From Iphione sp. A-MEVVRFRX5 (lineage: Eukaryota): a stretch of DNA of 64,000 nt. The notes below the pieces were generated by a model. That model saw only the letters and a list, made by a program, of their open reading frames with translations, ran no database searches and had not been told where the DNA came from. The DNA is taken from assembly GCA_976226885.1 (NCBI GenBank), contig OZ320313.1, forward strand, positions 141,298,001 to 141,362,000, in the 5' to 3' direction. Of the stretch, positions 4,440-64,000 are shown piece after piece. The position numbers and the translations under genes were made by a program. The first letter of the stretch is position 1; each line of letters begins with the position of its first letter.

Positions 4440-4622
4440 GCGAGTGTTTAGGCATGCTGTGAATAGTTTGCCTAAGCAGCTGAGGAGGGTAGTTCCCCAG
4501 TGTGTTTACTGATCTCATCTAAGCCCAGTGGTAGTTTCGTATTTATTATAATAATGATTTTTCACATGTAAAACACTGAAATGGAGAGAAATTATAATTC
4601 TCATTGTTAGAACAGTGGTTAA

Positions 4623-4726
4623 GTTCACTTTTTGCTTGTAGCCATCAGGATTAAGCCCCTCAGCCTCGGGCCTATCAGCCCTCGACTTCAGGGCTTAATC
4701 CTGAGGGCTACAAGCAAAAAGTGGAC
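4623..4726. repeat. Short foldback (hairpin) element
   Basis: Arm 4623-4658 gttcactttttgcttgtagccatcaggattaagccc pairs almost perfectly with 4691-4726 gggcttaatcctgagggctacaagcaaaaagtggac. Confidence 0.8.
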
Positions 4727-4855
4727 TTTGGGACTCGTCCCAAAATGAGCAGATGTAGTCCTGTTGGAGAATTCTTTGAATTTCGGAAAAGTAGAATCTT
4801 TCCTCACAAAGATGCCCCTATTTGTAGGATATTTATGTTTAACTTCAGAGAGAGA

Positions 4856-5965
4856 TGTAGAATACAAGACACGACGCCATGCTGCTGTAAAACCGGAAGT
4901 GCTTTATTATTATAATCTCGTTCAGACATGACAATCCCTCCTTTCTTCGGATAAAGAACTTCTCACAGATACATATCTTTATCATAGAACACACCATTAC
5001 TTTATGAGTAATACATCTTTGGACCTTTACCATATTACTCTATACATACAAGCAATAACATTCTGAGTGTGAACATAGTGAGAGGTACACTAGGTTGTTA
5101 CATAGTCTTTTAAATAATCTGGTTTTCTACATGATCTGCTTGGACGATCAGGTACTCTTGGTGATACATCTTGTGAGGGACTATGTAGTGGACTTTGCAC
5201 AGGCACACTAACATCTGGCGGGTCAACAGTCTCTTGTTCTGAGAAACTCAGACGCCTTGGAGGGGTTTCAATTACCTCTGCCTGACCCTTAGGTGTACCC
5301 TCTACATACTTCTTGACATGGCTGACATGTCTTTTGTAGGTAACACTTTCTGGTGTGCTCACAATTATCTGAGGCCCACATCTACCAGTTACTTTAACTG
5401 GAGTTGCATGAAAAGGAGATGACAGCTTGTTGTCTTTGTTTTGATTTTTAATTAAAACTGAGTCTCCAACTTGGAGATCCTCGTCAGCTGTCTCAGTGCG
5501 ACTTTTATTAGTTCTTTCTGACATTTTGAATTTTCTTTCTCTGTCAGTATCTCTCATCTCCCCATCAAAAGCTCTTGGTCTCAGGGAAGGAAGATTAGTT
5601 CGCACTTTCCTGTTGAACAGAGCTTCAGCTGGACTAACCCCAGTAGTAGAATGAGGTGTGGTGCGGTACGCACGCAGGAAGAGTTTAAGCTCTTTCCTCC
5701 AGTCCTTCTTTTCAGCTTGGAAGGCTCTCATAGACTTTAACAGAGTGCGATTAATTCGTTCAACTTCACCATTTGCCTGAGGCCAATATGGAGTGGTTAG
5801 TCTGTGTGAAATGTCTAACCTTTCAAGATACTGCGAGAATTTATCAGCTTTGAACTGCGGTCCATTATCTGTGGTGATGGAATAGGGTATTCCGAAAAGG
5901 TCAATGGACTCTTCAACTGCCTCAATGACTTTGTCAGTGGTAGTGGTCTTCATTGGCCTCTCCAA
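4856..5965 (-). mobile_element. Mag/SURL-type Ty3/Gypsy 3' fragment: integrase, 3' UTR, PPT and short LTR
   Basis: Integrase remnant 5090-5965. Polypurine tract aagaaaggaggga (4935-4947) is followed by TGTCATG...CTACA (4933 to 4856) containing AATAAA. Confidence 0.85.
5090..5965 (-). pseudogene. 5'-truncated Gypsy (Mag-like) integrase core and C-terminus
   Basis: ITTDNGPQF, TTPYWPQANGEVERINRTL, YRTTPHSTTGVSPAE, and a terminal RxxRxxRKPDYLKDYV typical of Mag-clade pol. Confidence 0.9.
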
Positions 5966-44615: not shown

Positions 44616-47600
44616 TCCCTCCCCTCCTTGGAAGTAATGCGCAGCATTACGTAGTTTATTTCCCACCCTCGAACCAAAATTTCATCTAAATTCAGCCCTT
44701 GATGCTGAAGGCATCTCAAGTCAATATGCCTGAGACACCATGCTTCAATAGGGGACAGGACCACATCTGTTACTACCAGGTGGTAGGCATTATAGGTGTA
44801 ACTGGAATACACTGGACTGGATTCATTGGGGGGAGGATATCACAGGATTCAACCACTGTGATGAGTTTTACAAAACATTCCTTGTCTCTTTCATCAATTA
44901 ACAGTGACCTCATTAGCACCTTTGAGACAATGAAGTCACTTGTGACATTAGTTCCCCATTTTCCCGTTACAGGCAATATACAGCACCTATTAGAGTTAGC
45001 TTTTTCCAGAACTTACTTTTTTGCAGGTGTGGAAGATACTCACACATTTTGGATATTCAAGAGGAAGAGTAGAGGAGTGGCATGGCCCGGGTCTGTCACT
45101 ACCATACTAACCAAGAATGACCTGCACCATGCCAAAGAGATGCTCGCTTGGTGGGACAAGCCTAGCCCAGGGGCAACCATGAGGACATTTTTTGGAACGA
45201 ATATTTACAACTGAAAGTTATCCGTTATAGTGACCCAAGGGTTCTAGGACTGCTGCGTCTTTCTTACAGAAAATTCTTCAATAAAACCCCTTACTGTCTA
45301 AAAACATTTCTGCAAGGCAAGAGAGCAAACTAGGCAGTACCATGTTCTTGAAAAACAGGAGACAATAACGACGTACCAAGAACATTTACCACTTATGGTT
45401 AATTTGTCAATTACATCTTAATAACCACAGCCTGAGCAAGCAACAACTTGGTAATACAGGTCATTACAATGATACATGTAGCGCTACAATACACGGTTAA
45501 CAACATCATTACTTATGAGTAAACACTTATTAAAGGTCAAGCAAGAGTATCTGTCTCTCCTGCCAAGTCTGTAATTTTACCGTTCCTCTTTAACGAAACA
45601 CAGAAAAGGGTTGTTCATTCTGCATATACAGCTCTGTGGGGGCTTTAGCATTGGTAGGGTGATAAATCTCAAATCCCTTGGGACCTTGCTTAAATTTCAC
45701 CGTGCTACCATTAACACATTGAATTCACATGGAAAGAGCAACCAGGATGGTGACTACCCAATTACCTTGGTCAAGATATGTGCCTAGGGATCATCTCATC
45801 TAGGAAAAATCCTCACAACCCTCTTGGCCTGTTTATCTTTCATGGGGAACATCATTGGCCAACCAAAATAAATGTCAATAAAGGTCAGGAGATACATGTA
45901 CCCAGCTTCGGATTCCTGATATGGTCCACAGGTATTAACTTCTACCTTCTGAAATGGGAAGACAATGCTCTCCATTTCCCAAAGAGGTCTCAACTGCCTC
46001 CTCAAGTTCCGAGTATTACATGGAACACACACAGAAATATGAGCAACAACATCTTGAACAAATTCTCCCTGTAATATAGTGCTCATACATGGTCATACAT
46101 TTTATCTATCCCATATGTCCCATGCCATCATGTTCCTAATCCAGCACTACACTACGAAACACCTTAGGTACTATTAACCACAGGCAAACTTCCGGATGCT
46201 AGCTAACATAGTACCATAACTACTCCACCTTCCTGTGTTTGAAGCATGTCCGCTCCCTGCGAGTTGGTATTGGGAGTATCCAAATTCATGTTATTCCTGC
46301 TCAATATGGATGAGGAGTCCTCATGGGGCCCTGACTCCGAATCTGTAGAAGCCTGGTCAAGTGGAGCCACCCCACCCTCTTTTCTTGGGGCAATCAATTG
46401 TGGGTCCATTTGACCTGACCAGAGTCTACTCAAAGTATCGGCCTGGACATTCTCCTGACCAGGGATGTATTAAATCTCACAGTCATATTTAGAAAGTTGC
46501 ATAGCCCATTGCTGGATCTTAGCAGGAACAAGAACTTTTATGGCTTATGGTCTGTATGGATTATGAACTTATGCCCATACAAGTAAGCCTGAAACTTCCG
46601 GATCGCAGAGACAATGGCAAAGCCTTCCTTTTCAATCATGGGCCACCTCTGTTGAGTCTTGCTCAGGTGGTGCGACATGTACTGGATAGGTCTTTCGCTG
46701 TTGTCAAATTCTTATGCTAACATGGCTGCAATGCAGGTGTCACTTCTATCAGTATGAAGGATGAATACTCAATCAAACATAGGAAAGGCCAGCAACAGAG
46801 GATTAGTTTTTTCTTCAGTTGCTTCAAAAGCGAGCTGACATTCTTCAGTCCACTGGAACTTGGCACGTTTTCTAGTCATAGCAATCAATGGCACTACAAT
46901 CTGTGCAAAGGGGGGAACGTACCTACGGTAGAAACTAGCCATCCCAATAAAGGAATGAACACCCTTTATGTCCGGAGGCAGTTCCAACTGCAAAATGCTG
47001 GTAACTTTTCCTTCATCCAGCTGCACCCCGTCAGGTGTAATGACATGCCCAAGGTGCTGCGGACAGAAGTGACATTTGCTTCCCTGCAGCTTTAACCCAG
47101 CATTGCGTAGTCGATCAAACACCATTTGCAGATGGCATAAGTGTGTGGACTGGTCCAGAGACCACACCAATATGTCATTGATAGAATTAACGTACCATTA
47201 ATTCCATCTAGGCCTTGAGCCATCAGTTCGCAAAACACACTGGGGGCGTTACACAAGCCAAATGGCATTACATTGAATTTGATCAACCCAGCATGACAAG
47301 CAAATACCGTTTTGGGTCAAGAGGCTTCTTCCATGGGAACCTGATGATACCTGCTTCGGAGGTCAAGGTTAAAAAAACAAGTGCTACCTCCTAAATTCAC
47401 GAGGATATCATCAATATGGGGCAAAGGCCAATTAAACTTTGTCATCACATCATTGACTTGTCTAATCTACACAAAACCGCATGGAGCCATCTCTTTTCTC
47501 CATGAGCACAATCAGTGAAGCCCAGGGACTGCGACTAGTATGAATTATTCCCGTATACAACATCTCTTGGATCTTTTCTTCCACTACTGTCTGACACGAT

Positions 47601-51699: not shown

Positions 51700-54600
51700 A
51701 GAGTTACCCCCTACTGAGGTGGGTAGGACGGTGAATCACGCAGACCAACCCCAAGACATGGAGCTGAATGACCTGTGCCATGTACTGAACTAACGAAGGG
51801 GCAAGGAGCGATTGACTGACAATGTACAACACTGGACCAAGCGAATTCTGACGGTGCTTCAAACTGGACAGGTGTCACAGGAGGTCACGCACTTTCTATG
51901 GTATGCCAGTGTTGGCCGTTGCCGGAACTTTGTGCCACCTGAAGAGCTACATCAGCTGGCAAGACATGACTAGGCTGCAAGACAACAACTCCATCACTCC
52001 ACAACCATGAAAATAAAAGGTGAGCGATAGTTTTGATCACTTTTCTGCCAAGAAATAGTCTGGGATTTGTGGAGGGTAGGATCCTAGAGAGACCTTCAAA
52101 AATTAAAAGAAAATGAATGCCTTGAAATAAGATTCTCAATCCTTAGGATACCTTGTTTTGATGATTATTGTATTTGTGGTCCTGGTAGGAATCTGGGCTA
52201 CCTGGCATGCAAGTTAATACCAGGATGGAGAATGGATGAGAGTCACTGTTCGGAAGGAGCCTGAACCCCATCCCTTAGCTTAAGAAGCTCAGACCTGCCA
52301 GACCCCATGAAAAAATCCAAAATTACAACAGTGTTTCCAGAGTATTGACAGGCATCTTGCCAAGGTCACTGAAAATTTAAGTATTCAGCTAAGCAGGTTG
52401 TACCTATTTTTGATGGGAAGCCAAAGAATTTTAAGCCATGGATGAAGGCCATTGAACATGCTACCCTAGGATTTGTCACTCAACCTCAGGCAGCCATATG
52501 CTTTAAGCAGCATTTAATACAACTAACTGCTGAGGGGCCGGTGGCTGATTATATCATTCAGTACATTAAGGAAGAAGACAACCGATTAAAGGGAGATGAC
52601 CCCCAGATCGTAGAACCTGTGTTGACACCACCTGAATGGGAAAGGTTCTGTAATCAACTCCCTCCAAGGTTTGGGGAAGTAATTGATCCCGTTTATGCTA
52701 AAGGACTATTAAGAAAGTGTAGGCTGTGTATGTGTATTCTGAGCGGTTGTTAGATCTAGCCTATGATGCATTTACCGAGGTAGAAATGCATCAGACTGTC
52801 ATGCAACAGAAGCTAGTTAAATTCTTTACCAATGGGTTGAAAAATGCCCAGGTTGCCCAAAAAATCATTCACGAAGCCCCGCAGGATTATGTTGCTGCAG
52901 TGAGGTGTGTGGGAGGAGAATCTGAGGTCCTCAGGCACATTACACTGAGGGGTCAAGATGAGCATACTCCTATGGAGGTTGATGCCATTGAGGCAAGTAA
53001 AAAGCAATTTAAAGGGAATTGTTACTGCTGTGGGACGCCGGTCCATGCAGCCAAAAACTGTTATGCTGCTAAGGCCAAGTTGAGGGATCAGAAGGAGGGT
53101 GGTCCTCAGACTCCACTTCCCAGGGTAGTGAAGAAGGTTCAGTGTTATGGTTGCAAGAAATACAAACACTTCCAGTCTCAGTGTCCTAGTAATACCACAA
53201 CCGATTAGGAGATCCTTGTAGAAGTGCAGGATGATGGACAGGCCAACTATTAAAATTAAGATCAGACCTTATGGGTACCACGCCCTGTTGGATACAGGGG
53301 CAGATGTGTCTGTAGTTAGGGAGGATGTGTATCGAAGCCTGAGACAAAGAGAGCTTGCCACTGCTGTGGGTCCTTTAGCCACAGCCTTACAAGGTGTGGA
53401 TAGGGGTGAATTGAAACAGGAAGGGACCACACTTATTGAATTTACCATGTTGGGAAAACCATTTTCCACCGAATTCCATGTAATAGCATGACCAAGGCCA
53501 ACTTTTATCCTTGGATGGAATTGGCTAGGCCAACATCCCATGCAGCTGTTACAGAGCAGGGATTTGTGAAGTGTGTGTCATTACTAATTCCCATGATTGG
53601 AGAACAGCAAATTGAAACAAAAGTATGTGCGGAGGCTGATACAGTTTTGCCATCCAGTACCAGTGTGCTGATGTTTGGGAAGTGAAGAAACAAGGGAGAT
53701 GCTAGTGAAGGATCCCCCATTGCTATGATTGTTTAGGGTACCTGCCAAAATTATCTGGCTGAGGAACCTGGAGTCATAGTGGCAAACTGTTTGACCCAAA
53801 CCACCATGATGATTGTGCCCGCCCTGATAGTCAACACCACCACACGGACCCTAATGATTAGGACAGGGAATGTTATGGCCAAAATGCTGCTGTTTGCATG
53901 GAGCTAGGGTTAATCCAGACCACCCTGCAACCCACTCCAAGGGCCATCACGGAGTCAGTAATGACTCTAGAGGAGTTGCTGGCTAATAACGAGGACCTCT
54001 TTGCGGCCTTGGATGTGGAGTTGGGATGCACTCACTTGGCTACCATGGATATTGACATGAACTTATAGCACAAAAGCCTTATCATACTCCCCTGTCATGA
54101 CAAGCAGTAGTGGAGGAAAAGATCCAGGGAACATTGGATGCTCGGATAATCTGCACTAGCCGAAGCCCATGGGCCTCACCTATCATGTTGGTGGAGAAGA
54201 AGGACAGCTCCATGAGGTTTTGTGCAGATTATAGAAGGGTTAATGATATCACCATCAAGTTTAATTGGCCCTTGCCTCACATCAATGATATCCTAGCTAA
54301 ATTGGGAGGTAGCACATGTTTTTTGACACTTGACCTTAGGAACAGGTATCATCAGGTTCCCATGGAAGATACCTCTTGGCCCAAGACAGCTTTCGTATGC
54401 CACACCTGTTTTGTGAATTTAATGTGATGCCATATGGATTGTGTAATGCACCCAGTGTATTTTGTGAACTGATGGCCAAAGTCTTGGACAGAATTAATGG
54501 CACATTCACAACGGCTTATACTGATGACATATTGGTGTGGTTGCCTGATCAGTCCACACACTTGCGTCATCTGCAAATGATGTTTGATTGGTTACGTAAT

Positions 54601-56380
54601 GCAGGACTCAAACTGAAAGCAGAGTAAGTGTGACTTCTTCTGTCCACAATTGCAGTACCTGGGGCATGTCATTACACCCCATGGTGTGTAGGCGGACCAA
54701 GTTAAGGTTGCTAACATTGCGGAGCTGGAGCTGCCTACCAATGTTAAGGGAGTCTGTTCTTTTATTGGGATGGCTAGTTTCTATCGGAGGTATGTTCTGG
54801 CTTTCACAAAGAAGCAGAGCCGTTGATTGCCATGACAAGGAAGCATGCTGAGTCCCATTAGACCTCTGAGTGCCAAGTAGTTTTTGAGACACTGAAAGAC
54901 AAACTTACTAATCCTCCATTATTGGCCTTTCCAATGTTTGCCTGTGTTTTCATCCTGTACACTGATGTGAGTGATGCCTGCATCTGAGCCATGTCGGCAC
55001 AAGAATTTGATAATGGCGAGAAGCCTATTCAGTATATGTCACACCACCTTAGTGAAACTCAACAGAGGTGGCCCATAATCAAGAAGGAAGGCTTTGCCAT
55101 TGTCTCTGCAAATCTGAAAGTTTATAGTCCGTACTGATCACAAGCCATTAAAGTTCCTGTATAAGTCTAAACAGAAGAATGCTAAGGTCCTACAATGGGC
55201 TATGCAACTTTCTGAAATACCATCCTGCTGTGAACGATAATGTTGAGCAGATGCACCAAGTTTGGAATGATGTCATGACTAAGTTGGCTTAGGGAGATAT
55301 GGCATACTTGGAAAGGCCCATACCCTCTGCTTTGTTGGTTTTGCATATGAGTATGAACGAGTCAACAAGGTATACCTCATGTATGCAAGGGACCCAGTAT
55401 TGCTCCAACCACAGTTGAGGTATTATGGGGAGGAGCATCATAAGCTTGCTTTACAGTGACATCATCAGGCAATGACGGTGGTTCATAGGAATGTCACTAA
55501 GGCACGACGGTGCATGAAGAAGTACCATGACCAACGAGCCACCAATGTGTCCTTTGAAATAGGGGATCCAGTGTATGTACAGAACCCCCTGCATTGTCAT
55601 AAGCTTAATTTGAGGTAGTAAACTTAATCATGAAAAAGCTTACTCCTGTCAACTTTGTGATAAAAGATCAGGTGACGGGGAAGTTGATGAAGGTCCATAG
55701 TGATCGTTTGCACTTGACTAACCTTGACTGGCAGTTGCCGAAATGTGATGGTGGGAGACTGCACCATTGTGTTGCATTAGCCGGAGATGGGATGCCTTCC
55801 AATTTAGATGGAAGTTTGTCCAGGCCATTGAATGGTTCCAATGGGTTATATTCCCCAGATGAGATTTCCCTTGCCTAGTTATTTGAAAGAGAATGGCAGC
55901 ATGAAATTTGTGATCTGCAGAATGACCCAATCTTCAACAGGAAGAGGGACAGGTCGAGGTGGAGGGCCCAGTTGCTGGAAACATTGATCCACCAGGTCAG
56001 GTGCATCAACCTGATGAGATAGTACCTGGTCCCGAGGCCGAGGACCATGGTGAAGGGTTAGGAGTGTTGTGTGACCAACTGGTCACCCATACAGTAAGGT
56101 AACATGAGGCTGGAGAGGAGGCTATTGCTCCAGTCAAAACGCTGGTTATCCCACTAGTGGGAGGGGAGCAACCTTGGTGGAGACAAGGTGATCTGCCAGA
56201 GGACCCAGTGCTGTGGGCAGACAGGACACATCCCCCCACTTATGCCAACAGAAGGAATCAGGGACCCAAAGGGAACCACGTTATCATACTGGGCAGTTAT
56301 GAAAAGGGAACAAACCTTGGCAAGTGAATTGCCACCTATGCAGAAACGGGCCTGTCAAGAATAGACACAGGGGCCATGGT
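51700..56380 (+). mobile_element. Decayed Ty3/Gypsy element related to the minus-strand copy, interrupted by the young element
   Basis: ORF0 relic 51758-52036. Gag 52442-53208 (PMEVD, CYCC...H..KNC). Protease ALLDTGADVS at 53231. RT SRSPWAS/YTDDILV 54110-54900. RNase H about 54950-55200. Integrase core deleted, C-terminal VHSDRL at about 55700. Confidence 0.9.
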
Positions 56381-56382
56381 AT

Positions 56383-56569
56383 TGTTGCGGGCTCCACTCA
56401 GCGGAGCCCGCTGTTGGCGGAAGTTGAGAATTTGGGGCTCCGCCCGGAGTAGCATTCTGTATATAAGTCGGGCCGGGCGGAGCTTCGTTGTCATTAGTGT
56501 CCTGTCTCTTAAGGAATAAACTTCATCAACTGTTATCTTGGAGTCATGTCCCTTCGATCGGGGCAAACA
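56383..56569 (+). repeat. 5' LTR (about 190 bp; 5' boundary 56383 or 56412)
   Basis: TGTTG start, TATATAAG 56460-56467, Inr TCATT 56491-56495, AATAAA 56515-56520, end GGGCAAACA at 56569. A 9-bp hairpin gcgggctcc/ggagcccgc lies at 56387-56411. Confidence 0.8.
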
Positions 56570-57808
56570 ATTGGTGACAGCGGTGGGATCCCTGCCCTAG
56601 GGGCTGAGGCGGAGGAGGAGGCGGAGGTAGTCAAGCTCCGGGCGGAGTCGGCAGAGCCGGCGGAGCCCGGCGAGTCAGCGGAGGTCGCCGAAGAGCTGCC
56701 GGAGCCCGCCTGGCTCCGCCCGGAACCCGCCACTGACTGGGACGCACAGTCCATGGAGGGGAGCCAGCCTCTGGGTAGCGGGGATGCCCAAACAAGAGAT
56801 GAGGTGGGGCATGGGACTGACGAGGAAGAAAGAGAGCACGGAGCCCCTACCTCATCCGCCCCACACACATTCAATGAGGACACTGATGACCACCCTCCTC
56901 CGGAGGAAGACGAAGGAGAGGGGGAGCCGACCGACCAGGCAGCTGAACCGCTTTGGACTAGCTTCGTCCGGGAGCTGAGTTCTGCCCTTCGACCGGAAGG
57001 AGGAAGTAAGAAGAGCCTGGTGAAACCTGACACTTACGATGGGAGTACGCCCTTGCGGGACTTCCTACAACATTTTGAGCTGGTGGCCCTGGCAAACCAT
57101 TGGGGGGCCGGAGAGAAAGCCATCCAGTTAGGCATCACCTTGAGGAAGTTGGCTCGGGCGGTCCTACGGAGTTCGGGGATCGATGTGGAGAAGCCCCGAG
57201 CTTACCAGGAACTGGTGGCCGCCCTCATGGAGAGGTTCCAGTCCAAGCACCAGACAGATGCATACATCCAGCAACTGAAGGGGTGTCGGCAGGGGAAGGC
57301 CGAGGCCCTGGCGGACCTTGCAGACGAAATTGAGCAATTGGTACAGCTGGCCTACCCCGAGGCGAAGGGGGCCTGGAAGGACCGGATGTGTCGCGAATAC
57401 TACGTCGGGGCCCTCAGCAACGAGAAGATTCGGAAGTGGGTGACCCAGGCCCGAGTGGCAACCTTCCGTGAGGCGTTGTCAGCATCGCAAGTAGCGGAAT
57501 CTTACTATCAGCACAAGTCCGAAAGGGTGGGACCCAAGCGTGTGCATAAGCTGGAAGTGGCCACAGAGGAAGCTCCAACCAACAAGCCCACCCCCGGGAC
57601 CGAGGCTACAGCGGCGGGCTTCGAGCGGCTGGAGCTCCTGCTCCAACAGCTACTGGCAGGCCAACAAGGGGTGGAGAAGGAGAATCGCCGGCCAAATAAC
57701 AAGAAATGCTTCAATTGCGGGGAACTCGGGCATTTCAAGCGCAACTGTCCCCAGCCCTTGAAGGAGCAACCGTCGGGAAACAGGGCGGCGGCCGCCCCTC
57801 GCCAGTAG
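56546..57808 (+). CDS. gag: Gag (420 aa): acidic N-terminus, capsid-like domain, CCHC zinc knuckle
   Basis: KPDTYDGSTPLRDFLQHFELVALANHW, LMERF, LKGCRQG...LADLADEIEQL..LAYP and CFNCGELGHFKRNC. Confidence 0.93.
   Translation: MSLRSGQTIGDSGGIPALGAEAEEEAEVVKLRAESAEPAEPGESAEVAEELPEPAWLRPEPATDWDAQSMEGSQPLGSGDAQTRDEVGHGTDEEEREHGAPTSSAPHTFNEDTDDHPPPEEDEGEGEPTDQAAEPLWTSFVRELSSALRPEGGSKKSLVKPDTYDGSTPLRDFLQHFELVALANHWGAGEKAIQLGITLRKLARAVLRSSGIDVEKPRAYQELVAALMERFQSKHQTDAYIQQLKGCRQGKAEALADLADEIEQLVQLAYPEAKGAWKDRMCREYYVGALSNEKIRKWVTQARVATFREALSASQVAESYYQHKSERVGPKRVHKLEVATEEAPTNKPTPGTEATAAGFERLELLLQQLLAGQQGVEKENRRPNNKKCFNCGELGHFKRNCPQPLKEQPSGNRAAAAPRQ
56572..56589 (+). other. Primer binding site TGGTGACAGCGGTGGGAT (probably tRNA-Leu)
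   Basis: 18 nt, 2 nt after the LTR end. The complement ATCCCACCGCTGTCA-CCA has a Leu-like T-stem (ATCCCAC) and an A discriminator. Confidence 0.8.
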
Positions 57809-57819
57809 AGAGGGCGGCC
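57775..57819 (+). other. -1 programmed ribosomal frameshift signal at the gag-pol junction
   Basis: G GGA AAC heptamer in the gag frame (57775-57781), an 8-nt spacer, then stem ggccgccc(ctc) / (gag-a)gggcggcc (57790-57819). Pol is in the -1 frame. Confidence 0.8.
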
Positions 57820-60111
57820 AGTCCCCAACCCCACTTGGAAGAACATCTCCGGATGATTCAGCTGTCCTGTGGGCGGGAGGTCACTCTGGAAGGGGAGAGT
57901 GGCCCCACAACGAACATCACGCTACCTAGTGAAATCGACGGTCGGATAGTCCCCTGGTTAGTGGATACCGGAGCGTCGCTGACCCTGCTGTCGGAAGAAG
58001 TCGCCGACACCCTGCCGCTCGGAGAATTGGAGCCGACAGTGGGGTGGATTTTGTGTGCAGACAGGAAACCCCTACGAGTGAAGGGGAGGACGAGGTTGAA
58101 GGCGAGTTTCCAAGGGATCGAGCTGGAAGTCAAGGCTTGGGTTGCCCAAATCGACTGCCCCGCCATCTTGGGGCTGGATACGCTTCGCAAATGGAAAGCA
58201 CAGGTGGACACGGAGGGGGCCGCACTGCGGGTGCGGGTCCCCGAGGACAACGGCGCGAGTGGATGCCGGGCAGAGTTGGCGGAAGATTGCCACCTGGATG
58301 GGAGGAGTGCAGTGCAGGCCCCCTTGCGATGGGCGGGGCTGGAGACCGACACTGGACCCGTGGTGGTGGAAGCCTCCCCCGAGTGGGAGGGTGGCTCGGG
58401 GATGCTACTGGCACGGACGGTGTGCCAGGCGGGAAGTCAGTCCGGAGTGGCGGAAATAACCAACCCTGGCCCCGTGGGGCGTCGACTGAGAAAGGGAACC
58501 ATTGTCGGCAGGGTCCAGCGGGTGGATGGGCCGGTGCAGGCCGTTCCGGAGTGCGAAGAGGTGGCGGACGAGGACGTGGAGCTAGGACCAGCGCTCAGGA
58601 CCCTGCTAGAGCGCCTACCACCCATGACTACAGATGAGCGGCAAGGGATCGAACAGATGTTGCGGTGTAACGCGCGCTGTTTCCAGGAGGACGGGCAACC
58701 ACTTGGGCACACTGACACGGTTCAGCATTGGATTGACGTACAAGGACATGCCCCTATCCGGCAGAGGGTACGCCGCCTTCCCCCGGTGAAGAAAGCGCTG
58801 GTACAGCAAGAAGTGGACCAGATGCTGCAGCAGGGGGTACTAGAGGCCTCTACCAGCCCGTGGGCGTCTCCCGTGGTTCTGGTCCGGAAGAAGGACCAAT
58901 CCTGGCGATTTTGCATCGACTACCGTGCCCTTAATCGAGTAACGAAGAAGGATGCCTACCCCCTCCCGTGGATTGATGAGACATTGGACGCGTTGGAGGG
59001 AGCACGGTTTTTCTCGGCAATCGACCTGGCCAGTGGCTATTGGCAGGTAGGGGTGAGACCAGAGGATCGAGAGAAGACGGCTGTTTGTACTCCCGGTGGG
59101 CTCTACCAGTTCCGGGTCATGCCCTTCGGACTGTGTAATGCGCCCTCCACCTTCGAGCGGTTGATGGAGGCGGTGCTCCGGGGCCTGGTTGGACAGTCTT
59201 GCCTGGTCTACCTGGACGATGTGATCGTGATAGGGAGGACGGTAGAAGAAATGACCCGCCGACTCGACGAAGTCTTCAGCCGCCTGGGGGAGGCCGGACT
59301 TAAAGTAAAGCCGCAGAAGTGTCAGCTGTTCCAGAGGGAGGTGGCCTATCTGGGGCATCGTGTGTCTGAAGAGGGGGTCCAGCCCGACCCTGAGAAGATC
59401 CGGGCCATCCAAGAGTGGCCTCCACCGCGCTGCATCACGGAATTGAGGAGCTTCATCGGACTGTGCTCCTACTACAGGAGCTTCGTGGAGGGGTTCGCAA
59501 TGCTGGCGGCCCCCCTGCACGGACTCTTGGAGAAAGGAAAGGAGTATCGCTGGGATACCGAATGTCAGCAGGCGTTTGAACAATTGAAGGGACGGTTGGT
59601 GACGGCCCCCGTCTTGGCGTACCCGCGACCGGAGGGACAGCTAGTGCTGGACACCGATGCGTCAGCAGCTGGAATCGGAGCCGTACTGTCACAAGAACAG
59701 CAAGGACAGGAGTGGGTGTTGGCCTACGCCAGTCGAAGTCTCGCGCGTCCAGAGAAGAACTACTGTGTCACCCGGAAAGAACTGTTGGCGGTAGTCTTCG
59801 GCCTGCGTAAGTTTTGCTCTTATGTTGGAGGGCGAAAGGTGGTCATCCGGACGGACCATAGTTCATTACGTTGGCTATGCAGCTTCAAGGAACCGGAGGG
59901 ACAGTTGGCCCGTTGGCTCGAGGAAGTCCACTGTTATGACTTGGAGGTGATACACCGCCCGGGAAGAAAGCACGGGAACGCCGATGGCCTTTCGCGAGTC
60001 AAGTGCCCCCAGTGTGGACGGGACCCGGAGGAGGATCTGCCGACCCTGGGGCAAGTCGGTGTTGGTGGCCCCTGCCACATTGGACTCCCTAGCCCAAGCC
60101 CAGAAGGCTGA
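57775..60111 (+). CDS. pol: Pol part 1: aspartic protease, reverse transcriptase, RNase H
   Basis: LVDTGAS; SPWASPVVLVRKKD; IDLASGYWQV; VMPFGLCNAPSTF; YLDD; DTDASAAGIGAVLSQ; RTDHSSL; NADGLSR. Confidence 0.95.
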   Translation, partial: GKQGGGRPSPVERAASPQPHLEEHLRMIQLSCGREVTLEGESGPTTNITLPSEIDGRIVPWLVDTGASLTLLSEEVADTLPLGELEPTVGWILCADRKPLRVKGRTRLKASFQGIELEVKAWVAQIDCPAILGLDTLRKWKAQVDTEGAALRVRVPEDNGASGCRAELAEDCHLDGRSAVQAPLRWAGLETDTGPVVVEASPEWEGGSGMLLARTVCQAGSQSGVAEITNPGPVGRRLRKGTIVGRVQRVDGPVQAVPECEEVADEDVELGPALRTLLERLPPMTTDERQGIEQMLRCNARCFQEDGQPLGHTDTVQHWIDVQGHAPIRQRVRRLPPVKKALVQQEVDQMLQQGVLEASTSPWASPVVLVRKKDQSWRFCIDYRALNRVTKKDAYPLPWIDETLDALEGARFFSAIDLASGYWQVGVRPEDREKTAVCTPGGLYQFRVMPFGLCNAPSTFERLMEAVLRGLVGQSCLVYLDDVIVIGRTVEEMTRRLDEVFSRLGEAGLKVKPQKCQLFQREVAYLGHRVSEEGVQPDPEKIRAIQEWPPPRCITELRSFIGLCSYYRSFVEGFAMLAAPLHGLLEKGKEYRWDTECQQAFEQLKGRLVTAPVLAYPRPEGQLVLDTDASAAGIGAVLSQEQQGQEWVLAYASRSLARPEKNYCVTRKELLAVVFGLRKFCSYVGGRKVVIRTDHSSLRWLCSFKEPEGQLARWLEEVHCYDLEVIHRPGRKHGNADGLSRVKCPQCGRDPEEDLPTLGQVGVGGPCHIGLPSPSPEG

Positions 60112-61897
60112 GCCCGAAGTGGCGGCCCTCATTCAAGCCTGGGAGGCAGAAGAGCCCCTCCCTGGACTGACTGGTAGTGATTCCCCGGAGGGGAGGTGGC
60201 TGAAGAGCGAGTCACGGCGGCTGAAGATGAAAGACAATCTGCTTTGTCGACGCTGGGAGGCAGAGGACGGAACGCTGTGCTACCAGGCTTATGTGCCCCA
60301 GCCATTGAGATACGACATCTGGTGTGAAGTCCACGCGGGAGCGCTGGGGGGGCACCTCAGCGCCGAGAAGACAGAAGGTGCCCTCCGCCGGAAATATTGC
60401 TGGCCAGGACTCCGACACGATGTGGAACGTTGGGTGAAGGCTTGCCGTGAGTGCCAGCAGCGACAGGATCCGGCTCGCCGGCACCGGGCTCCCCTTCAGC
60501 TTCGGGTGGCCCCGGCCCCGTGGGAGTTCATAGCCGTGGATGTGTGTAGACCTTTCCCCGAGACAGAGCGAGGAAACAAGTACATCATTGTGGTGGCGGA
60601 TCACTTTACGAAGTGGACGGAGGCATTCCCCACTCCGGAGGTCACGGCGGCGAAGACAGCAGACGTCCTACTCCGAGAAATCATCTGTCGATACAGCCCC
60701 CCCCGTATTCTTCATTCCGACCAGGGCCGGAACTTCAAGGCGGCAGTGATGCGGGAACTCCTACAGATGCTGGGCATTCAACGGTCACGCACCACTCCGT
60801 ACCATCCCCAGAGTGATGGAGTCGTCGAAAGGTTCAACTGCACCCTCTTAGGAATGTTGGCCAAGGTGGTCCGGGAAGATCAATCCGACTGGGACCTCCG
60901 AGTGCCCTTCATTCTGGCGGCCTACCGGGCTACCCCGCACTGTACCACCGGGTTCTGTCCGAACTGGTTAACCTTACAACGCGAGACCACGCTTCCGGTG
61001 GAGCTGATGGTGGGCAGCCCCCGAGACGAGCCACAATCAGCTTCCGACTATGCCAAGCAGATTAGGGAGCGCTACATTCAAGGCCACCAGTTAGCCCGGC
61101 GCCACTTACAGAAGTCGGCCGAGCATCAGAAGGATTGGTACGATCAGCGAGTTTGTGAGCAAGAATTCGACGTTGGCGATCAAGTTTGGGTCTACTCACC
61201 GATAAAGAAGAAGGGGCGGTCCCCCAAATTGCAAAGTCGCTGGTTAGGACCGTGGACAATTCAAGCCAGGCTCAGTGCTGTCATCTACCGCATCTCTCGA
61301 AACCAGAAGACTCGGGTTGTCCATGCAGATCTGCTAAAGAAAGCGATCTCTCCTAGTTCAGAGGAAGAAGAAAGACTCGGGCGAGTGTGTGTCATCACCC
61401 TGATGCCGGACACGGATGCGGCCCCGGGGGGTGCGGGCCAACCTACTGTGCCCCTGCCCCGCTGGTACCGCTGTAGGCCTAAGACAACTGGCCAGCCGCC
61501 TGTGGTTCCCCACAGGAGCACCAGGGACAACAGGATGCCCCCGCCCCAGCAACGCCCTCCAATACAACGGATCCCCCAAGGCTGGGTGGACTTGGTGGCC
61601 CGGGAACTCCGTCTCCTGAGTGACCGGACTTGCCAAGTCCTGCTCCAATCGCGGGAAGTCGCGGGACGGAAGAGAGGAGAGAAGCCAGGCCCCTGCCCGG
61701 GGACCTACCGTCGGGCATGGCAGAGACTGCGAGGAATCAGGAGGAGGTTGCAGAGACAGTATGGCGGACGCGCGGTGCAGCACCTGGTGGAGACCCTCTG
61801 GAGGAAGATCGGAGAAAGAAGACACCCAGCCTGGGGTCGGCGACAGTTGAAGACGTCGAGCGGAACTCGCCCTGAGCCCTGGCGGAGCACACCCTAA
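60074..61897 (+). CDS. pol: Pol part 2: integrase (HHCC, DDE, GPW) plus a C-terminal extension of about 185 aa; separated from part 1 by a +1 frameshift
   Basis: VHAGALGGHL...CRECQ; AVDV, HSDQGRNF, DGVVERFN; RWLGPWTI; VVHADLLK. Confidence 0.92.
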   Translation, partial: ATLDSLAQAQKAEPEVAALIQAWEAEEPLPGLTGSDSPEGRWLKSESRRLKMKDNLLCRRWEAEDGTLCYQAYVPQPLRYDIWCEVHAGALGGHLSAEKTEGALRRKYCWPGLRHDVERWVKACRECQQRQDPARRHRAPLQLRVAPAPWEFIAVDVCRPFPETERGNKYIIVVADHFTKWTEAFPTPEVTAAKTADVLLREIICRYSPPRILHSDQGRNFKAAVMRELLQMLGIQRSRTTPYHPQSDGVVERFNCTLLGMLAKVVREDQSDWDLRVPFILAAYRATPHCTTGFCPNWLTLQRETTLPVELMVGSPRDEPQSASDYAKQIRERYIQGHQLARRHLQKSAEHQKDWYDQRVCEQEFDVGDQVWVYSPIKKKGRSPKLQSRWLGPWTIQARLSAVIYRISRNQKTRVVHADLLKKAISPSSEEEERLGRVCVITLMPDTDAAPGGAGQPTVPLPRWYRCRPKTTGQPPVVPHRSTRDNRMPPPQQRPPIQRIPQGWVDLVARELRLLSDRTCQVLLQSREVAGRKRGEKPGPCPGTYRRAWQRLRGIRRRLQRQYGGRAVQHLVETLWRKIGERRHPAWGRRQLKTSSGTRPEPWRSTP

Positions 61898-61963
61898 CGG
61901 GGCGGAGCCCGCCCAGAGACCGAGCTCCAGGCGGAGATTACACCGCACTCTGCCGCCATCCAG

Positions 61964-62064
61964 CCAATCAGAAGCAGACGCGGGAAAGTTCGACCAATCA
62001 GCGACTGGCGGAGCTAGCCCTGAAGGGATATAAGCTGGCGGCCCTAGAAGAGGCGATTCATTCC
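61964..62064 (+). promoter_or_regulatory. Internal RNA pol II promoter for ORF3
   Basis: CCAATCA at 61964 and 61994, TATAAG at 62029, and a perfect Inr TCATTCC at 62058-62064 (A is 31 nt from the TATA). Confidence 0.75.
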
Positions 62065-62265
62065 GTCCATCGCCGCGCTCCACCCACCCAGAGATACTTC
62101 CCGAATATTTCCCGCCCGGAACTGAGTACGTCTGCGGAGGTTTCCGCGGAGTTCGACCGGAGTTCGTCCAAGTCGCTGCCGGAGCTCGCAGACAGGCGGA
62201 GCTCGCTACACAAAGTCAGCGGAGCTCGCCCGGCGGAGCTTGCCCTACCAGAACCCGAGAAGACC

Positions 62266-64000
62266 ATGACATCCAGAGGGAGAGCCCAGTACTGCCAGTA
62301 CTGTGGCTACATTTCTGACAAGCCGGGCAATTTCGATAGGCACATGTTAACCCATGGGAAGCAGGGGTTCGTCCGCCGCTGTCCGGTGCCCCGTTGCCAG
62401 GGGGCACACTTCGGCCGCCAGGATGACTTCCGGCGGCACCTGGAGAACAAACACAAGCAAGACGCCGACAACCCCCTCGTCCTGGGCCAGGACGTAGACC
62501 TGGAGTTTATAGACCTGGTCAGTGGCCAGAACGTGCCTGTCCCAGAGTGTCGCCGAGAGGAGTACCAGCGGCAGCTGAAGGTGGAGGCGTACGAGCGGGA
62601 GAAGGAAGCAGCCATGATCCGGGGGGAGGCCCCCCCACCGCGACCCAAGTTAGCTCGGAAGCCCCCCCGGGGAAGGAAGGCGTCAGCTGCCGCAGGCCGC
62701 CCTCCTCCTCCCCCCCGGGACGACAACCCAGAGGAGGACGAGGATGTGGAGGAAGAGACGGGGGCTACGGAGGGGCCCCGCCTGCGCCCCCGAGTCGGGC
62801 GTGGGGGACAGGTCTCCTCCACCGTGGCCACACCAGGGGCAGGCCACCCACCAGTCACCCCGGGTTCTTCGGCCTCAGTAGACATTCCGCTGTTCGGGCT
62901 CGACGTGTCGCCAGAGGTTCCAGAGGTGCGGATCGGCCGCAAGGTCCGCAAGTCTACGGGAAAAGCGGCTAACCGAAGTACATCAGCAGGAGAGACGCCC
63001 ACCGTTCCTGCACCGGCGAGCCCGGCCGCACCGGGGTCCGCCTCTGCCGCCTCCACGCCTGGGGCTGCTCGGGTGCGCGGCCTTCCCCCCACCAGATCCC
63101 GACCCGCCGAGTCGTCTGGGGAGTGGCCAACCCCCTCCATCCCTGGGAAGGACTTGGACTTCCAGGCCATGCGGGACGAGGCCGATCGAAGGAAGAGGAG
63201 GTACCAGCCACAGACCTCTCCCGTCACCCCGGCTAGTCTCCCCTCACCTGCGAAGAAGGTCGCCAACATTACGTCCTCCACGATGTCGCCGCTACACCGG
63301 GCGGTGATTGCCGCGGGGATTCGGGACCGCACCCCCCAGTCCACTCCCGCTTCCACTAGTTCGTCCTACAGTGAGGCGGCATGGGAGCTGGACGCGCGAC
63401 TAGGAGAAGGGTGGGAGAACGTGGAGAGGGAGAAGCGGCCCAAGGACATGGTGGTGATTGGATCGGATCCGGAGTCCGAGGACGAAACCCAGGTGGAAGA
63501 CGCTACCGCCGCCTCTGAACCATTGGCCGAGCAGCTCAGCGCGAGCCTGGGGACCCCCTGTGGGCGCATCCGCTACGCCCGGCTGGATGTGGCAGGGGGG
63601 ACCCCGGCGGATGATACAGCAGCTGAGGACGTTCCCTTGTCTGAGGGGGAAGCCGCCCTCACCCTGGCGGAGCTCGCGGGGGAAGAGCTCCGCCCGGAGC
63701 ACCCGGCGACAGAGACCGAACCTGGCGGAGCTCGCCCCGAGCCGGCGGAGCCCGCCCCTACCCAGCCGCCGGAGACGACTGTTCAGCCCTCAGAGCCTGG
63801 CCGGGCTCCGCCGACGGGGCACCAACCAGAGGCACCTGAGCAGCCGCTGACGACGCCGGAGCCCGATACCAGGGCTGAGCCTACCCCCCCCCGGCACTCC
63901 CGGGACGGCGCACTGAAGCAGGGGCAGGGGAGACCCTGCCCAAGGAGATCCCCCCGGCACTCCCGGGACGGCGAGGGGAGGAGCCGGCACCTACCCTGCC
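62266..64000 (+). CDS. ORF3: tandem C2H2 zinc-finger protein with a long Pro/acidic disordered tail (at least 578 aa, 3' incomplete)
   Basis: ACCATG start with no stop to the window end in my codon-by-codon translation. ZF1 is CQYCGYISDKPGNFDRHMLTH and ZF2 is CPVPRCQGAHFGRQDDFRRHLENKH. Basic patches RKPPRGRK and RRKRR. Confidence 0.88.
   Translation, partial: MTSRGRAQYCQYCGYISDKPGNFDRHMLTHGKQGFVRRCPVPRCQGAHFGRQDDFRRHLENKHKQDADNPLVLGQDVDLEFIDLVSGQNVPVPECRREEYQRQLKVEAYEREKEAAMIRGEAPPPRPKLARKPPRGRKASAAAGRPPPPPRDDNPEEDEDVEEETGATEGPRLRPRVGRGGQVSSTVATPGAGHPPVTPGSSASVDIPLFGLDVSPEVPEVRIGRKVRKSTGKAANRSTSAGETPTVPAPASPAAPGSASAASTPGAARVRGLPPTRSRPAESSGEWPTPSIPGKDLDFQAMRDEADRRKRRYQPQTSPVTPASLPSPAKKVANITSSTMSPLHRAVIAAGIRDRTPQSTPASTSSSYSEAAWELDARLGEGWENVEREKRPKDMVVIGSDPESEDETQVEDATAASEPLAEQLSASLGTPCGRIRYARLDVAGGTPADDTAAEDVPLSEGEAALTLAELAGEELRPEHPATETEPGGARPEPAEPAPTQPPETTVQPSEPGRAPPTGHQPEAPEQPLTTPEPDTRAEPTPPRHSRDGALKQGQGRPCPRRSPRHSRDGEGRSRHLPC

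What the first reader, a model, noticed from the sequence alone, without database searches (positions are those of the whole stretch)
61882..62238. The element's own zinc fingers are predicted to read GCG-GAG, the hexamer arrayed around its promoters: a candidate self-regulating retrotransposon
Seen: GCGGAG occurs 9 times on the + strand in 357 bp around the internal promoter and 5' UTR (61882, 61902, 61931, 62008, 62134, 62146, 62196, 62219, 62233), often as GGCGGAGCTCGC. It also occurs 3 times in the LTR (56401, 56438 reverse, 56477). By eye I found only about one copy in 3.5 kb of pol; my rough chance expectation for 357 bp at about 65% GC is 0.2-0.3 per strand. Established C2H2 code: ZF2 helix R(-1) D2 D3 R6 resembles the Egr/Zif268 RSDELTR finger and predicts GCG. 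ZF1 K(-1) N3 R6 predicts GA(G/T). Fingers bind antiparallel, giving 5'-GCG GAG-3'. Inference: ORF3 binds its own LTR and internal promoter, as an activator, a repressor or a shield against silencing.
Basis: partly seen in the sequence, partly recalled or inferred. Interest (0 to 1): 0.93.

Follow-up and report, generated by a model that had tools for sequence, protein, structure and literature searches.

The report
Retrotransposon zinc-finger gene and its motif array
A jumping gene of the Ty3/gypsy kind carries an extra gene for a two-zinc-finger protein, and the six-letter DNA word those fingers are predicted to read is piled up around the element's two promoters; this suggests, but does not prove, that the element regulates itself.

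Summary
GCGGAG occurs 9 times, all on the + strand, in 61882-62238. Dinucleotide shuffles give a mean of 0.41, and none of 5000 reached 9. It is the most over-represented hexamer there.

The stretch lies between pol and a third gene, ORF3, of a Ty3/gypsy element. It holds two CCAATCAG boxes, a TATAAG box and the ORF3 leader.

ORF3 belongs to the element. Its closest relative, found in two young copies (L001/L002), carries a homologous ORF3 with two N-terminal fingers between integrase and the 3' LTR. More distant relatives (L006, L007, L012) carry finger ORF3s too.

ZF2 (R,D,D,R) has the contact residues of the engineered GCG module RSDDLVR. ZF1 (K,G,N,R) resembles the GAC module DPGNLVR, with Lys at -1.

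Nothing tests binding. The finger linker is non-canonical. The distant relatives' fingers lack base-reading residues. The motif extends to about 13 bp (GGCGGAGCTCGCC), longer than a two-finger site. In the relatives a splice-acceptor-like site sits just before the ORF3 start.

Verdict: a candidate self-regulating circuit like foamy-virus Tas, partly supported, about 0.4.

The parts
56383..56569 (+). 5' LTR, about 187 bp. The 3' end is fixed by homology; the 5' end is inferred from TGTT...AACA inverted termini. It holds TATAAG at 56462-56467 and three GCGGAG sites (56401 +, 56438 -, 56477 +).
   Evidence: The LTR end and primer-binding site align with the L001 LTR end, which was defined from its LTR pair. 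The 3' LTR lies beyond the window end.
56572..56589 (+). Primer-binding site, TGGTGACAGCGGTGGGAT.
   Evidence: 17 of 18 bases match the L001 sequence directly after its LTR. The assignment to a tRNA-Leu 3' end is from memory and was not tested.
56609..56719 (+). Second GCGGAG cluster (5 + and 1 -), in the leader or the N-terminal part of gag. It is partly a 9-bp microsatellite-like repeat, GGCGGAGCC.
   Evidence: All five + sites are in frame as Ala-Glu. Five of the 8 Ala-Glu pairs here use GCGGAG; none of the other 15 Ala-Glu pairs in gag, pol and ORF3 upstream of 63667 does.
56546..57808 (+). gag: capsid-like region and a CCHC zinc knuckle. The true start is uncertain, because the first ATG lies inside the LTR; the next in-frame ATG is at 56750.
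57706..61897 (+). pol: protease, reverse transcriptase, RNase H and integrase. It is read as two ORFs (57706-60111 and 59984-61897) because of one frame change between RNase H and integrase. The last 180 or so codons are not conserved.
61882..62060 (+). Candidate internal promoter: four + strand GCGGAG sites (61882, 61902, 61931, 62008), CCAATCAG at 61964 and 61994, and TATAAG at 62029.
   Evidence: This is sequence evidence only; no transcription data were available.
62134..62238 (+). Five + strand GCGGAG sites in the presumed ORF3 leader, several extended to GCGGAGCTCGCC.
   Evidence: No significant RNA structure was found (z = -0.39).
62266..64000 (+). ORF3, open for 578 codons to the end of the window. 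It has two N-terminal fingers, then a tail rich in proline and acidic residues, with basic clusters RKVRK (residue 225) and RRKRR (residue 308).
   Evidence: There is no stop in this frame but 13 in each other + frame. The codon-position GC pattern looks coding, most clearly in codons 1-110.
62293..62355 (+). ZF1 (C10-H30): C-x2-C-x12-H-x3-H. Helix positions -1, 2, 3, 6 are K, G, N, R.
   Evidence: Pfam zf-H2C2_5, 28 bits on the full protein and 34 bits on the first 100 residues, against a cut-off of 27; best solved match is the BCL11A finger 5-6 pair.
62380..62454 (+). ZF2 (C39-H63): C-x4-C-x13-H-x4-H. Helix positions -1, 2, 3, 6 are R, D, D, R.
   Evidence: The Cys and His columns are conserved across four ORF3 families. 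Pfam does not call this finger on its own.
63667..63811 (+). Fourth GCGGAG cluster (3 + and 2 -), inside the ORF3 coding region. The sites are in mixed reading frames, so the motif is a DNA-level feature.

Best explanation
The 357-bp stretch is the regulatory region in front of a third gene of a Ty3/gypsy LTR retrotransposon. It has a CCAAT/TATA-type promoter and the ORF3 leader. Both are studded with same-strand copies of GGCGGAGC, and the same word brackets the LTR TATA box. ORF3 encodes a probably nuclear protein: two N-terminal C2H2 fingers and a long disordered tail rich in acidic residues and proline. The most likely working model is that the motif copies are binding sites shared by the element's two promoters. 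The element's own ORF3 protein would read them: finger 2 on GCG, finger 1 on GAG. That would couple ORF3 expression to LTR activity in a feedback loop, as in the foamy-virus Tas and internal-promoter circuit. What is shown: the enrichment, the promoter-like anatomy, that ORF3 belongs to the element lineage, and that the finger residues match engineered GCG and GAN modules. What is inferred: binding, nuclear location, whether the effect is activation or repression, and use of the internal promoter.
For: Enrichment: 9 seen against 0.41 expected, 0 of 5000 shuffles reach it, and GCGGAG is the top hexamer. The motif also lies on both sides of the LTR TATA box, and 15 bp upstream of the internal TATAAG, where a near-copy (GGCGGCCC) follows it. 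ORF3 is a lineage feature: it is in the sister family L001/L002 inside near-identical LTRs (integrase tree SH-aLRT 98), and in L006, L007 and L012. ZF2 contact residues R,D,D,R equal those of the GCG module RSDDLVR. ZF1 shares P1, G2, N3 and R6 with the GAC module DPGNLVR, with Lys at -1. The predicted order 5'-GCG GAG-3' equals the top hexamer. The finger pair aligns with BCL11A fingers 5-6, which are part of that protein's DNA-binding finger domain (its role there is from my own knowledge) and have a similar long linker. The motif is absent from relatives whose fingers differ. L001 has its own family-specific repeats shared by the LTR and the ORF3 upstream region, and it keeps R-1, D3, R6 in ZF2 while its LTR U3 region is an array of GCG-rich units. 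Only 6 of 24 sites contain the Sp1 core GGGCGG.
Against: There is no binding, expression or localisation data. The prediction was made after the motif was seen. Arg-rich fingers and G-rich promoter words are both common, so a chance match is more likely than 1 in 4096; my rough estimate is 1 in 300 to 1 in 16. The linker is GKQGFVRR (8 residues), not TGEKP. ZF2 has an extra residue in its hairpin, and two fingers alone usually bind weakly. Conservation extends to about 13 bp (GGCGGAGCTCGCC), which points to common descent of the copies or to a larger reader. Part of the array at 56641-56683 is a 9-bp slippage repeat. ORF3 fingers in L006, L007 and L012 lack base-reading residues. The L006 LTR shows no motif that matches its fingers. 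In the relatives the ORF3 ATG directly follows a splice-acceptor-like site.
Confidence: 0.4

Rival explanations
1. The GGCGGAGC copies are binding sites for host factors, such as Sp/KLF-like GC-box proteins or another host zinc-finger protein. They would work with NF-Y at the CCAAT boxes and TBP at the TATA box. ORF3 would do something else. This would resemble the array of Su(Hw) sites in the leader of Drosophila gypsy.
For: The anatomy is a textbook host-type promoter: two CCAATCAG and a TATAAG. Six of 24 sites carry GGGCGG. GGGCGGAG occurs in the SV40 GC boxes bound by Sp1 (from memory). The 13-bp consensus is longer than a two-finger site. Arrays of host-factor sites in gypsy leaders are known (from my own knowledge).
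Against: Eighteen of 24 sites lack the GGGCGG core, and the base two positions upstream of GCGGAG is unconstrained. The motif does not occur in arrays in the other 56 kb of the window or in related elements. The exact match to the element's own finger code would be a coincidence.
Confidence: 0.3
2. The array has no dedicated reader. It is a by-product of local duplication and slippage of a GC-rich unit (GGCGGAGCYCGCC) in fast-evolving non-coding and low-complexity coding parts of the element.
For: TRF finds 6-, 9- and 14-bp units. The flanks are conserved over about 13 bp, as expected for copies by descent. All sites in two clusters share one orientation. Clusters lie in low-complexity coding sequence rich in Ala, Glu and Pro. 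Related elements also carry tandem repeats in the same places: 64-bp units in L001 and 178-bp units in L006.
Against: The nine sites in 61882-62238 have irregular spacing (12 to 126 bp) and are not a tandem array. The sites sit next to both TATA boxes, including one in reverse orientation. The motif is held in mixed frames inside ORF3 and against codon usage in the gag cluster.
Confidence: 0.15
3. ORF3 is expressed from a spliced subgenomic RNA driven by the LTR, as env is in gypsy and in retroviruses. Its fingers would serve an RNA- or protein-binding role such as RNA handling, packaging, or nuclear import of the pre-integration complex. The 'internal promoter' would then be incidental.
For: A pyrimidine tract followed by CAG or TAG ends 1-5 nt before the ORF3 ATG in L001 (score 10.8; background 0.09 per kb), L006, L007 and L012. 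L006 has only 78 bp between integrase and ORF3. L007 finger 2 gives a weak, far sub-threshold Pfam match to the dsRNA-binding jaz type.
Against: The acceptor-like site in the window is the weakest (score 4.8, 14 nt before the ATG), and no good donor was found in the leader. The window and L001 both have CCAAT boxes upstream of ORF3. The window fingers carry classic base-reading residues. The ORF3 leader has no significant RNA structure. Splicing and an internal promoter can coexist.
Confidence: 0.15

Closest known systems
Foamy virus (Spumaretrovirinae) Tas transactivator with its internal promoter
   Same: A retroelement with a second promoter inside the genome, upstream of an accessory gene. 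The protein made from that gene binds both the internal promoter and the LTR promoter (abstracts of PMC8670036 and PMC4929722). The anatomy proposed here is the same: a promoter downstream of pol, an accessory nucleic-acid-binding protein, and shared motifs at both promoters.
   Different: No sequence similarity: Pfam finds only C2H2 families in ORF3. Tas is not a zinc-finger protein (my own knowledge). The host element here is a Ty3/gypsy retrotransposon with no env. Binding and transactivation are untested.
Additional ORFs of plant LTR retrotransposons, for example maize Grande gene 23
   Same: An accessory gene lies between pol and the 3' LTR. [quoted passage not shown]
   Different: In that review the nuclear examples are antisense and the sense ORFs are env-like, and zinc fingers are not mentioned. 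Here the ORF is in sense, comes from an animal-type gypsy lineage, and carries C2H2 fingers.
Su(Hw) binding-site array in the leader of Drosophila gypsy
   Same: A dense array of sites for a zinc-finger protein lies in the leader, just downstream of the 5' LTR of a gypsy-type element (my own knowledge). The 56609-56719 cluster sits in the corresponding place.
   Different: Su(Hw) is a 12-finger host protein and its sites are AT-rich. Here the candidate reader is encoded by the element, and the array also occurs in the LTR and in front of ORF3.
Egr/Zif268-type and Sp/KLF-type fingers, and engineered GNN finger modules
   Same: ZF2 (RQDDFRR) has the -1, 2, 3, 6 residues of the GCG module RSDDLVR. 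ZF1 (KPGNFDR) shares four of the seven helix residues (-1 to +6) — P1, G2, N3, R6 — with the GAC module DPGNLVR. ZF2 has the C-x4-C spacing of Egr1 finger 1, with weak PDB alignments at E about 1.
   Different: There are only two fingers, a non-TGEKP linker, a 13-residue spacer in ZF2, and an H-x4-H ending. No significant homology to Egr or Sp proteins was found.

Membership tests
Ty3/gypsy (Metaviridae) LTR retrotransposon | gag with a CCHC knuckle, followed by pol in the order protease, reverse transcriptase, RNase H, integrase | tested here: met
   Pfam hits in that order: zf-CCHC, Retrotrans_gag, Asp_protease_2, RVT_1, RT_RNaseH, Integrase_H2C2, rve, Integrase_p58_C. The integrase nests among gypsy integrases.
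Ty3/gypsy (Metaviridae) LTR retrotransposon | A pair of long terminal repeats, and a primer-binding site next to the 5' LTR | tested here: inconclusive
   Only the 5' LTR is in the window. Its 3' end and the primer-binding site are fixed by alignment to L001, whose LTR pair is complete. No 3' LTR occurs before base 64000.
Classical DNA-binding C2H2 zinc-finger pair | C-x2-4-C-x12-H-x3-5-H spacing with a profile match | tested here: inconclusive
   ZF1 meets it (zf-H2C2_5 at 28-34 bits against a cut-off of 27). ZF2 has x13 and gets no Pfam call of its own, but it aligns as a finger with BCL11A finger 6 and its Cys and His are conserved across families.
Classical DNA-binding C2H2 zinc-finger pair | Canonical TGEKP-type linker, 7 residues from His to Cys | tested here: not met
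   The linker is GKQGFVRR, 8 residues. L001 has a linker of about 17 residues.
Classical DNA-binding C2H2 zinc-finger pair | Sequence-specific DNA binding | not testable with these tools
   Only a code-based prediction was possible. The AlphaFold2 single-sequence model was unusable (pLDDT 43).
Sp/KLF GC box | GGGCGG (or GGGTGG) core | tested here: not met
   Only 6 of 24 GCGGAG sites carry GGGCGG, and GGGGCGGGG is absent. The common core is GGCGGAGC, in 14 of 24 sites.
Tas-like autoregulatory circuit (works like; not homologous) | A functional internal promoter upstream of the accessory gene | tested here: inconclusive
   Two CCAATCAG and a TATAAG lie 235-300 bp upstream of the ORF3 ATG, but there are no transcript data. 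In the relatives a splice acceptor offers another route.
Tas-like autoregulatory circuit (works like; not homologous) | The accessory protein binds both the LTR and the internal promoter | not testable with these tools
   The shared motif at both promoters is shown. Occupancy is not.
env-type ORF3 of errantiviruses | Envelope or fusion-protein domain, signal peptide, transmembrane segment | tested here: not met
   Pfam finds only zinc-finger families. The protein is hydrophilic and rich in Pro, Ala, Arg and Glu.

The most novel reading that the evidence does not exclude
ORF3 is a sequence-specific C2H2 regulator encoded by a retrotransposon. It reads GGCGGAG-type sites in its own LTR and in its own internal promoter, and its fingers co-evolve with those sites from family to family. 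This would be the first Tas-like autoregulatory circuit described in a Ty3/gypsy (Metaviridae) element, in a lineage of animal retrotransposons that carry a zinc-finger gene where others carry env.
Probability: 0.3. Interest if true: 0.85.

Novelty: new variant of a known kind. Interest (0 to 1): 0.62.

Why it matters
LTR retrotransposons are usually thought to depend on host transcription factors and to be targets of host zinc-finger repressors. An element that brings its own sequence-specific finger protein, with matching sites at two promoters, would reverse that picture. It would give a simple, testable case of a feedback loop encoded by a transposon, and a natural system for studying co-evolution of fingers and sites. 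It would also add a new kind of accessory gene, beyond env, to animal gypsy elements. Even if binding fails, one result stands and deserves annotation: a clade of gypsy elements carries a conserved N-terminal zinc-finger ORF3. I found no description of it in seven literature searches, and it has almost no detectable homologues among 1.8 billion representative proteins.

Tried and rejected
- ORF3 homologue searches were nearly empty. The word-indexed search found nothing. The full HMMER scan gave only a generic finger pair from a blowfly protein and a spurious repeat protein. A two-sequence profile found only the second L001-family copy.
- An exact look-up of the window's gag found nothing.
- A JGI metagenome scan with the ORF3 N-terminus found nothing. 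The scan with integrase gave only distant loci, 44% identity or less.
- No second copy or solo LTR of this family is in the window, so sites could not be compared between copies.
- The idea that the internal region is a duplicated LTR plus leader was rejected. The alignment shows matches only at the motif copies.
- The RNA-structure idea for the leaders was rejected: z = -0.39 and -1.72.
- Rfam and tRNA scans were empty.
- The AlphaFold2 single-sequence model was too poor to use for a fold search.
- The covariation test was inconclusive. L001 keeps the GCG-type finger 2 and has GCG-rich U3 repeats, but its finger 1 (D,Q,W,Q) cannot be decoded. L006 shows no match between its fingers and its LTR.
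- L003, L004 and L005 (integrase relatives) show no finger ORF3.
- No contig looked human.
Full report
**1. The observation**

GCGGAG occurs at all nine stated + strand positions in 61882-62238 and never on the - strand there. The stretch is 63.3% GC.
- In 5000 dinucleotide-preserving shuffles the mean was 0.41 copies (maximum 4), and none reached 9.
- Against a second-order Markov model trained on the whole GC-rich element, GCGGAG is the most over-represented hexamer (0.26 expected). GGCGGAGC is the most over-represented 8-mer (5 seen, 0.026 expected).
- The three LTR copies are real.
- Pol has none on + and one on - in 4.2 kb.

One has 5 + and 1 - sites at 56609-56719, just downstream of the primer-binding site. 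The other has 3 + and 2 - sites at 63667-63811, inside ORF3. In total the element has 24 sites in 7.7 kb, against 6 in the other 56 kb of the window.

The array in the finding is not a tandem repeat. Spacings run from 12 to 126 bp, and TRF reports only a 14-bp unit with 1.9 copies.

**2. What surrounds it**

Bases 56383 to 64000 are a Ty3/gypsy LTR retrotransposon that is much richer in GC (about 0.6) than its surroundings (about 0.42).
- Pfam finds gag (CCHC knuckle, capsid-like region), protease, reverse transcriptase, RNase H and integrase, in that order.
- Pol is read as two ORFs because of one frame change between RNase H and integrase, so this copy is slightly damaged.
- The 5' LTR ends at 56569. 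It is followed by a primer-binding site at 56572-56589 that matches, at 17 of 18 bases, the sequence directly after the LTR of the related element L001.
- The LTR start at 56383 is inferred from TGTT...AACA termini.
- The 3' LTR lies beyond the window.
- No other copy of the family is in the window.

**3. The stretch itself**

It begins at the last codons of the pol reading frame. That frame is not conserved over its last 180 or so codons. The stretch contains:
- four GCGGAG sites (61882, 61902, 61931, 62008);
- two copies of the 8-mer CCAATCAG (61964, 61994; 0.007 expected);
- TATAAG at 62029, one of only two in the element, the other being the LTR TATA box at 56462;
- five more sites at 62134-62238;
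- the ORF3 ATG at 62266.

The internal TATA box has a GGCGGAGC core 14 bp upstream, and the LTR TATA box has one 17 bp upstream. A further copy follows the LTR box, and a near-copy (GGCGGCCC) follows the internal one.

This is the anatomy of an RNA polymerase II promoter plus leader, but it rests on sequence alone. A forced alignment of the LTR plus leader with this region shows similarity only at the motif copies, so it is not a duplicated LTR.

**4. ORF3 is a real gene of this lineage**

The frame is open for 578 codons to the window end, while each of the other two + frames has 13 stops. The codon-position GC pattern looks coding, most clearly in codons 1-110.

Residues 10-63 form two C2H2 fingers.
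- ZF1 passes the Pfam threshold.
- The pair aligns best with BCL11A fingers 5-6 among solved structures (E about 1e-4).
- The rest of the protein is rich in Pro, Ala, Arg and Glu, with acidic blocks and two basic clusters.

ORF3 has almost no detectable homologues. Its integrase's nearest relative, P0003, is 49% identical over the integrase core and is its sister in the tree with SH-aLRT 98. P0003 lies in an 11.7-kb element (L001) with LTRs 99.9% identical. A second copy (L002) has identical LTRs.

Both copies carry, between integrase and the 3' LTR, an ORF of 611 residues. It starts MASR (the window's starts MTSR) and has two fingers at the same positions and a disordered tail.

More distant members of the same 12-row integrase clade (SH-aLRT 84) also have an ORF3 with N-terminal fingers (L006 and L007). 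So does L012, from a metagenome. Three other relatives examined (L003, L004, L005) do not.

ORF3 is therefore an accessory gene of a gypsy sub-lineage, not a captured host promoter next to the insertion.

**5. The finger code**

With the first zinc-binding His of each finger as helix position +7, the residues at -1, 2, 3, 6 are:
- ZF1: K19, G21, N22, R25;
- ZF2: R51, D53, D54, R57.

Published tables of engineered modules give RSDDLVR for GCG, DPGNLVR for GAC and RSDNLVR for GAG (PMC7317221 Table 1; PMC5260015).
- ZF2 (RQDDFRR) has exactly the contact residues of the GCG module.
- ZF1 (KPGNFDR) has P1, G2, N3 and R6 of the GAC module, with Lys instead of Asp at -1. By the standard code (my own knowledge) this changes the 3' base from C to G or T.

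Fingers bind antiparallel to the DNA strand, so the prediction is 5'-GCG GA(G/T)-3'.

Several caveats apply.
- The linker has 8 residues and is not TGEKP.
- ZF2 has one extra hairpin residue.
- Two fingers usually bind weakly.
- The prediction was made after the motif was seen.
- Arg-rich fingers and G-rich promoter words are both common. I put the chance of a coincidental match between about 1 in 300 and 1 in 16, not 1 in 4096. This is my own estimate.

**6. The shape of the motif**

Aligning all 24 sites gives GGCGGAGC in 14 of them, with weaker conservation out to GGCGGAGCTCGCC. That is longer than a two-finger footprint. It points to copies related by descent, to a larger reader, or to two readers.

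Only 6 of 24 sites contain the Sp1 core GGGCGG, and the base two positions upstream of GCGGAG is unconstrained. Most sites are therefore poor classical GC boxes.

In the cluster after the primer-binding site, all five + sites are in frame as Ala-Glu. Five of the 8 Ala-Glu pairs there use GCGGAG; none of the other 15 Ala-Glu pairs in gag, pol and ORF3 upstream of 63667 does. Part of this cluster is a 9-bp slippage repeat. In the ORF3 tail the sites are in mixed frames. The motif is therefore a DNA-level feature, but repeat expansion contributed to it.

Neither leader folds significantly better than shuffled sequence.

**7. Comparison across families**

GGCGGAGC is absent from the related elements. 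L001 has its own repeats:
- a CG-rich array (CGCGCG eight times; units like TTACGCGCGCG) just upstream of a homologous TGTATATAAG box in U3;
- CCCTGCC...GCAGCCTAC-type units, both in the LTR and in three 64-bp tandem repeats upstream of ORF3. These repeats also carry inverted CCAAT boxes.

L001 finger 2 keeps R-1, D3 and R6 (a GCG-type finger). Finger 1 is D,Q,W,Q, which I cannot decode. This is compatible with co-evolution of fingers and sites, but it is not a test.

L006 fingers (R,E,D,I and S,G,A,T) and the L007 and L012 fingers lack typical base-reading residues. L007 finger 2 gives a weak, far sub-threshold Pfam match to the dsRNA-binding jaz type (12.8 bits against a cut-off of 22.6). 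The AT-rich L006 LTR has no matching array.

Promoter reading, if real, is therefore a property of the window/L001 branch and not the ancestral role of ORF3.

**8. How ORF3 is expressed**

In L001, L006, L007 and L012 the ORF3 ATG lies 1-5 nt after a pyrimidine tract ending in CAG or TAG. L001 scores 10.8 on a rough acceptor score, against a background of 0.09 such sites per kb. L006 has only 78 bp between integrase and ORF3. This suggests a spliced subgenomic RNA, as for env.

The acceptor-like site in the window is the weakest (score 4.8, 14 nt before the ATG), and no convincing donor was found in the leader. The window and L001 both have CCAAT boxes upstream of ORF3. Both routes may exist, and transcript data would decide.

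**9. Best reading and rivals**

- Most likely, about 0.4: the motif copies are binding sites shared by the LTR promoter and an internal promoter, and the element's own ORF3 protein reads them. This would be a feedback loop that works like foamy-virus Tas with its internal promoter (PMC8670036, PMC4929722).
- About 0.3: host factors read the sites and ORF3 does something else.
- About 0.15: the array is a duplication or slippage by-product.
- About 0.15: ORF3 is expressed by splicing and has an RNA- or protein-binding role.

**10. Novelty**

Accessory ORFs between pol and the 3' LTR are known.
- They include env in errantiviruses and additional ORFs in plant elements. [quoted passage not shown]
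- I found no report of a C2H2 finger ORF3 in gypsy elements in the searchable library. That library is incomplete and does not include Repbase annotations.
- I rate this a new variant of a known kind.

**11. Limits and compliance**

- No contig fetched looked human.
Copies were only compared.
- The host species is unknown. The relatives come from unnamed ENA metagenome assemblies.

Noticed in passing
L001:14615-14817 and L001:6221-6330: The sister element has three exact 64-bp tandem repeats upstream of its ORF3, each with a CTGCCATTGGCAG palindrome (an inverted CCAAT box). It also has a CG-rich array (CGCGCG eight times) just upstream of the LTR TATA box. Similar CCCTGCC...GCAGCCTAC units recur in its LTR.
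   Followed up: partly
L001:14945-14966, L006:11620-11645, L007:5415-5436, L012:7515-7540: In four related families the ORF3 ATG lies 1-5 nt after a pyrimidine tract ending in CAG or TAG. This looks like a 3' splice site and suggests a spliced subgenomic RNA.
   Followed up: partly
window 59984-60111: The RNase H and integrase parts of pol are in different frames with a 128-nt overlap, so this copy has one frame change in pol and is probably not autonomous.
   Followed up: no
window 52726-55878: A different, more AT-rich gypsy-type element lies directly upstream of the GC-rich element: gag with two CCHC knuckles at 52726-53208, reverse transcriptase similarity at 54056-55198, and an integrase tail at 55630-55878.
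   Followed up: no
window 3741-5965 and 46422-47593: Other transposon remnants: a reverse-transcriptase C-terminal fragment (3741-4439, -), an integrase (5090-5965, -) and a gypsy RT/RNase H (46422-47593, -). The window is largely made of transposable elements.
   Followed up: no
L006:3919-5039: About six copies of a 178-bp tandem repeat lie between the 5' LTR/primer-binding site and gag of this related element.
   Followed up: no
window 61340-61897: The integrase reading frame runs about 180 codons past the conserved integrase end (relatives cover only about 67% of the ORF). This may be a chance open frame in GC-rich sequence, so the spacer in front of ORF3 may be about 900 bp.
   Followed up: no
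window 56546-56750: The first ATG of the gag frame lies inside the LTR, upstream of the primer-binding site. It is unresolved whether gag starts there or at the next in-frame ATG (56750), and so whether the 56609-56719 motif cluster is coding.
   Followed up: partly
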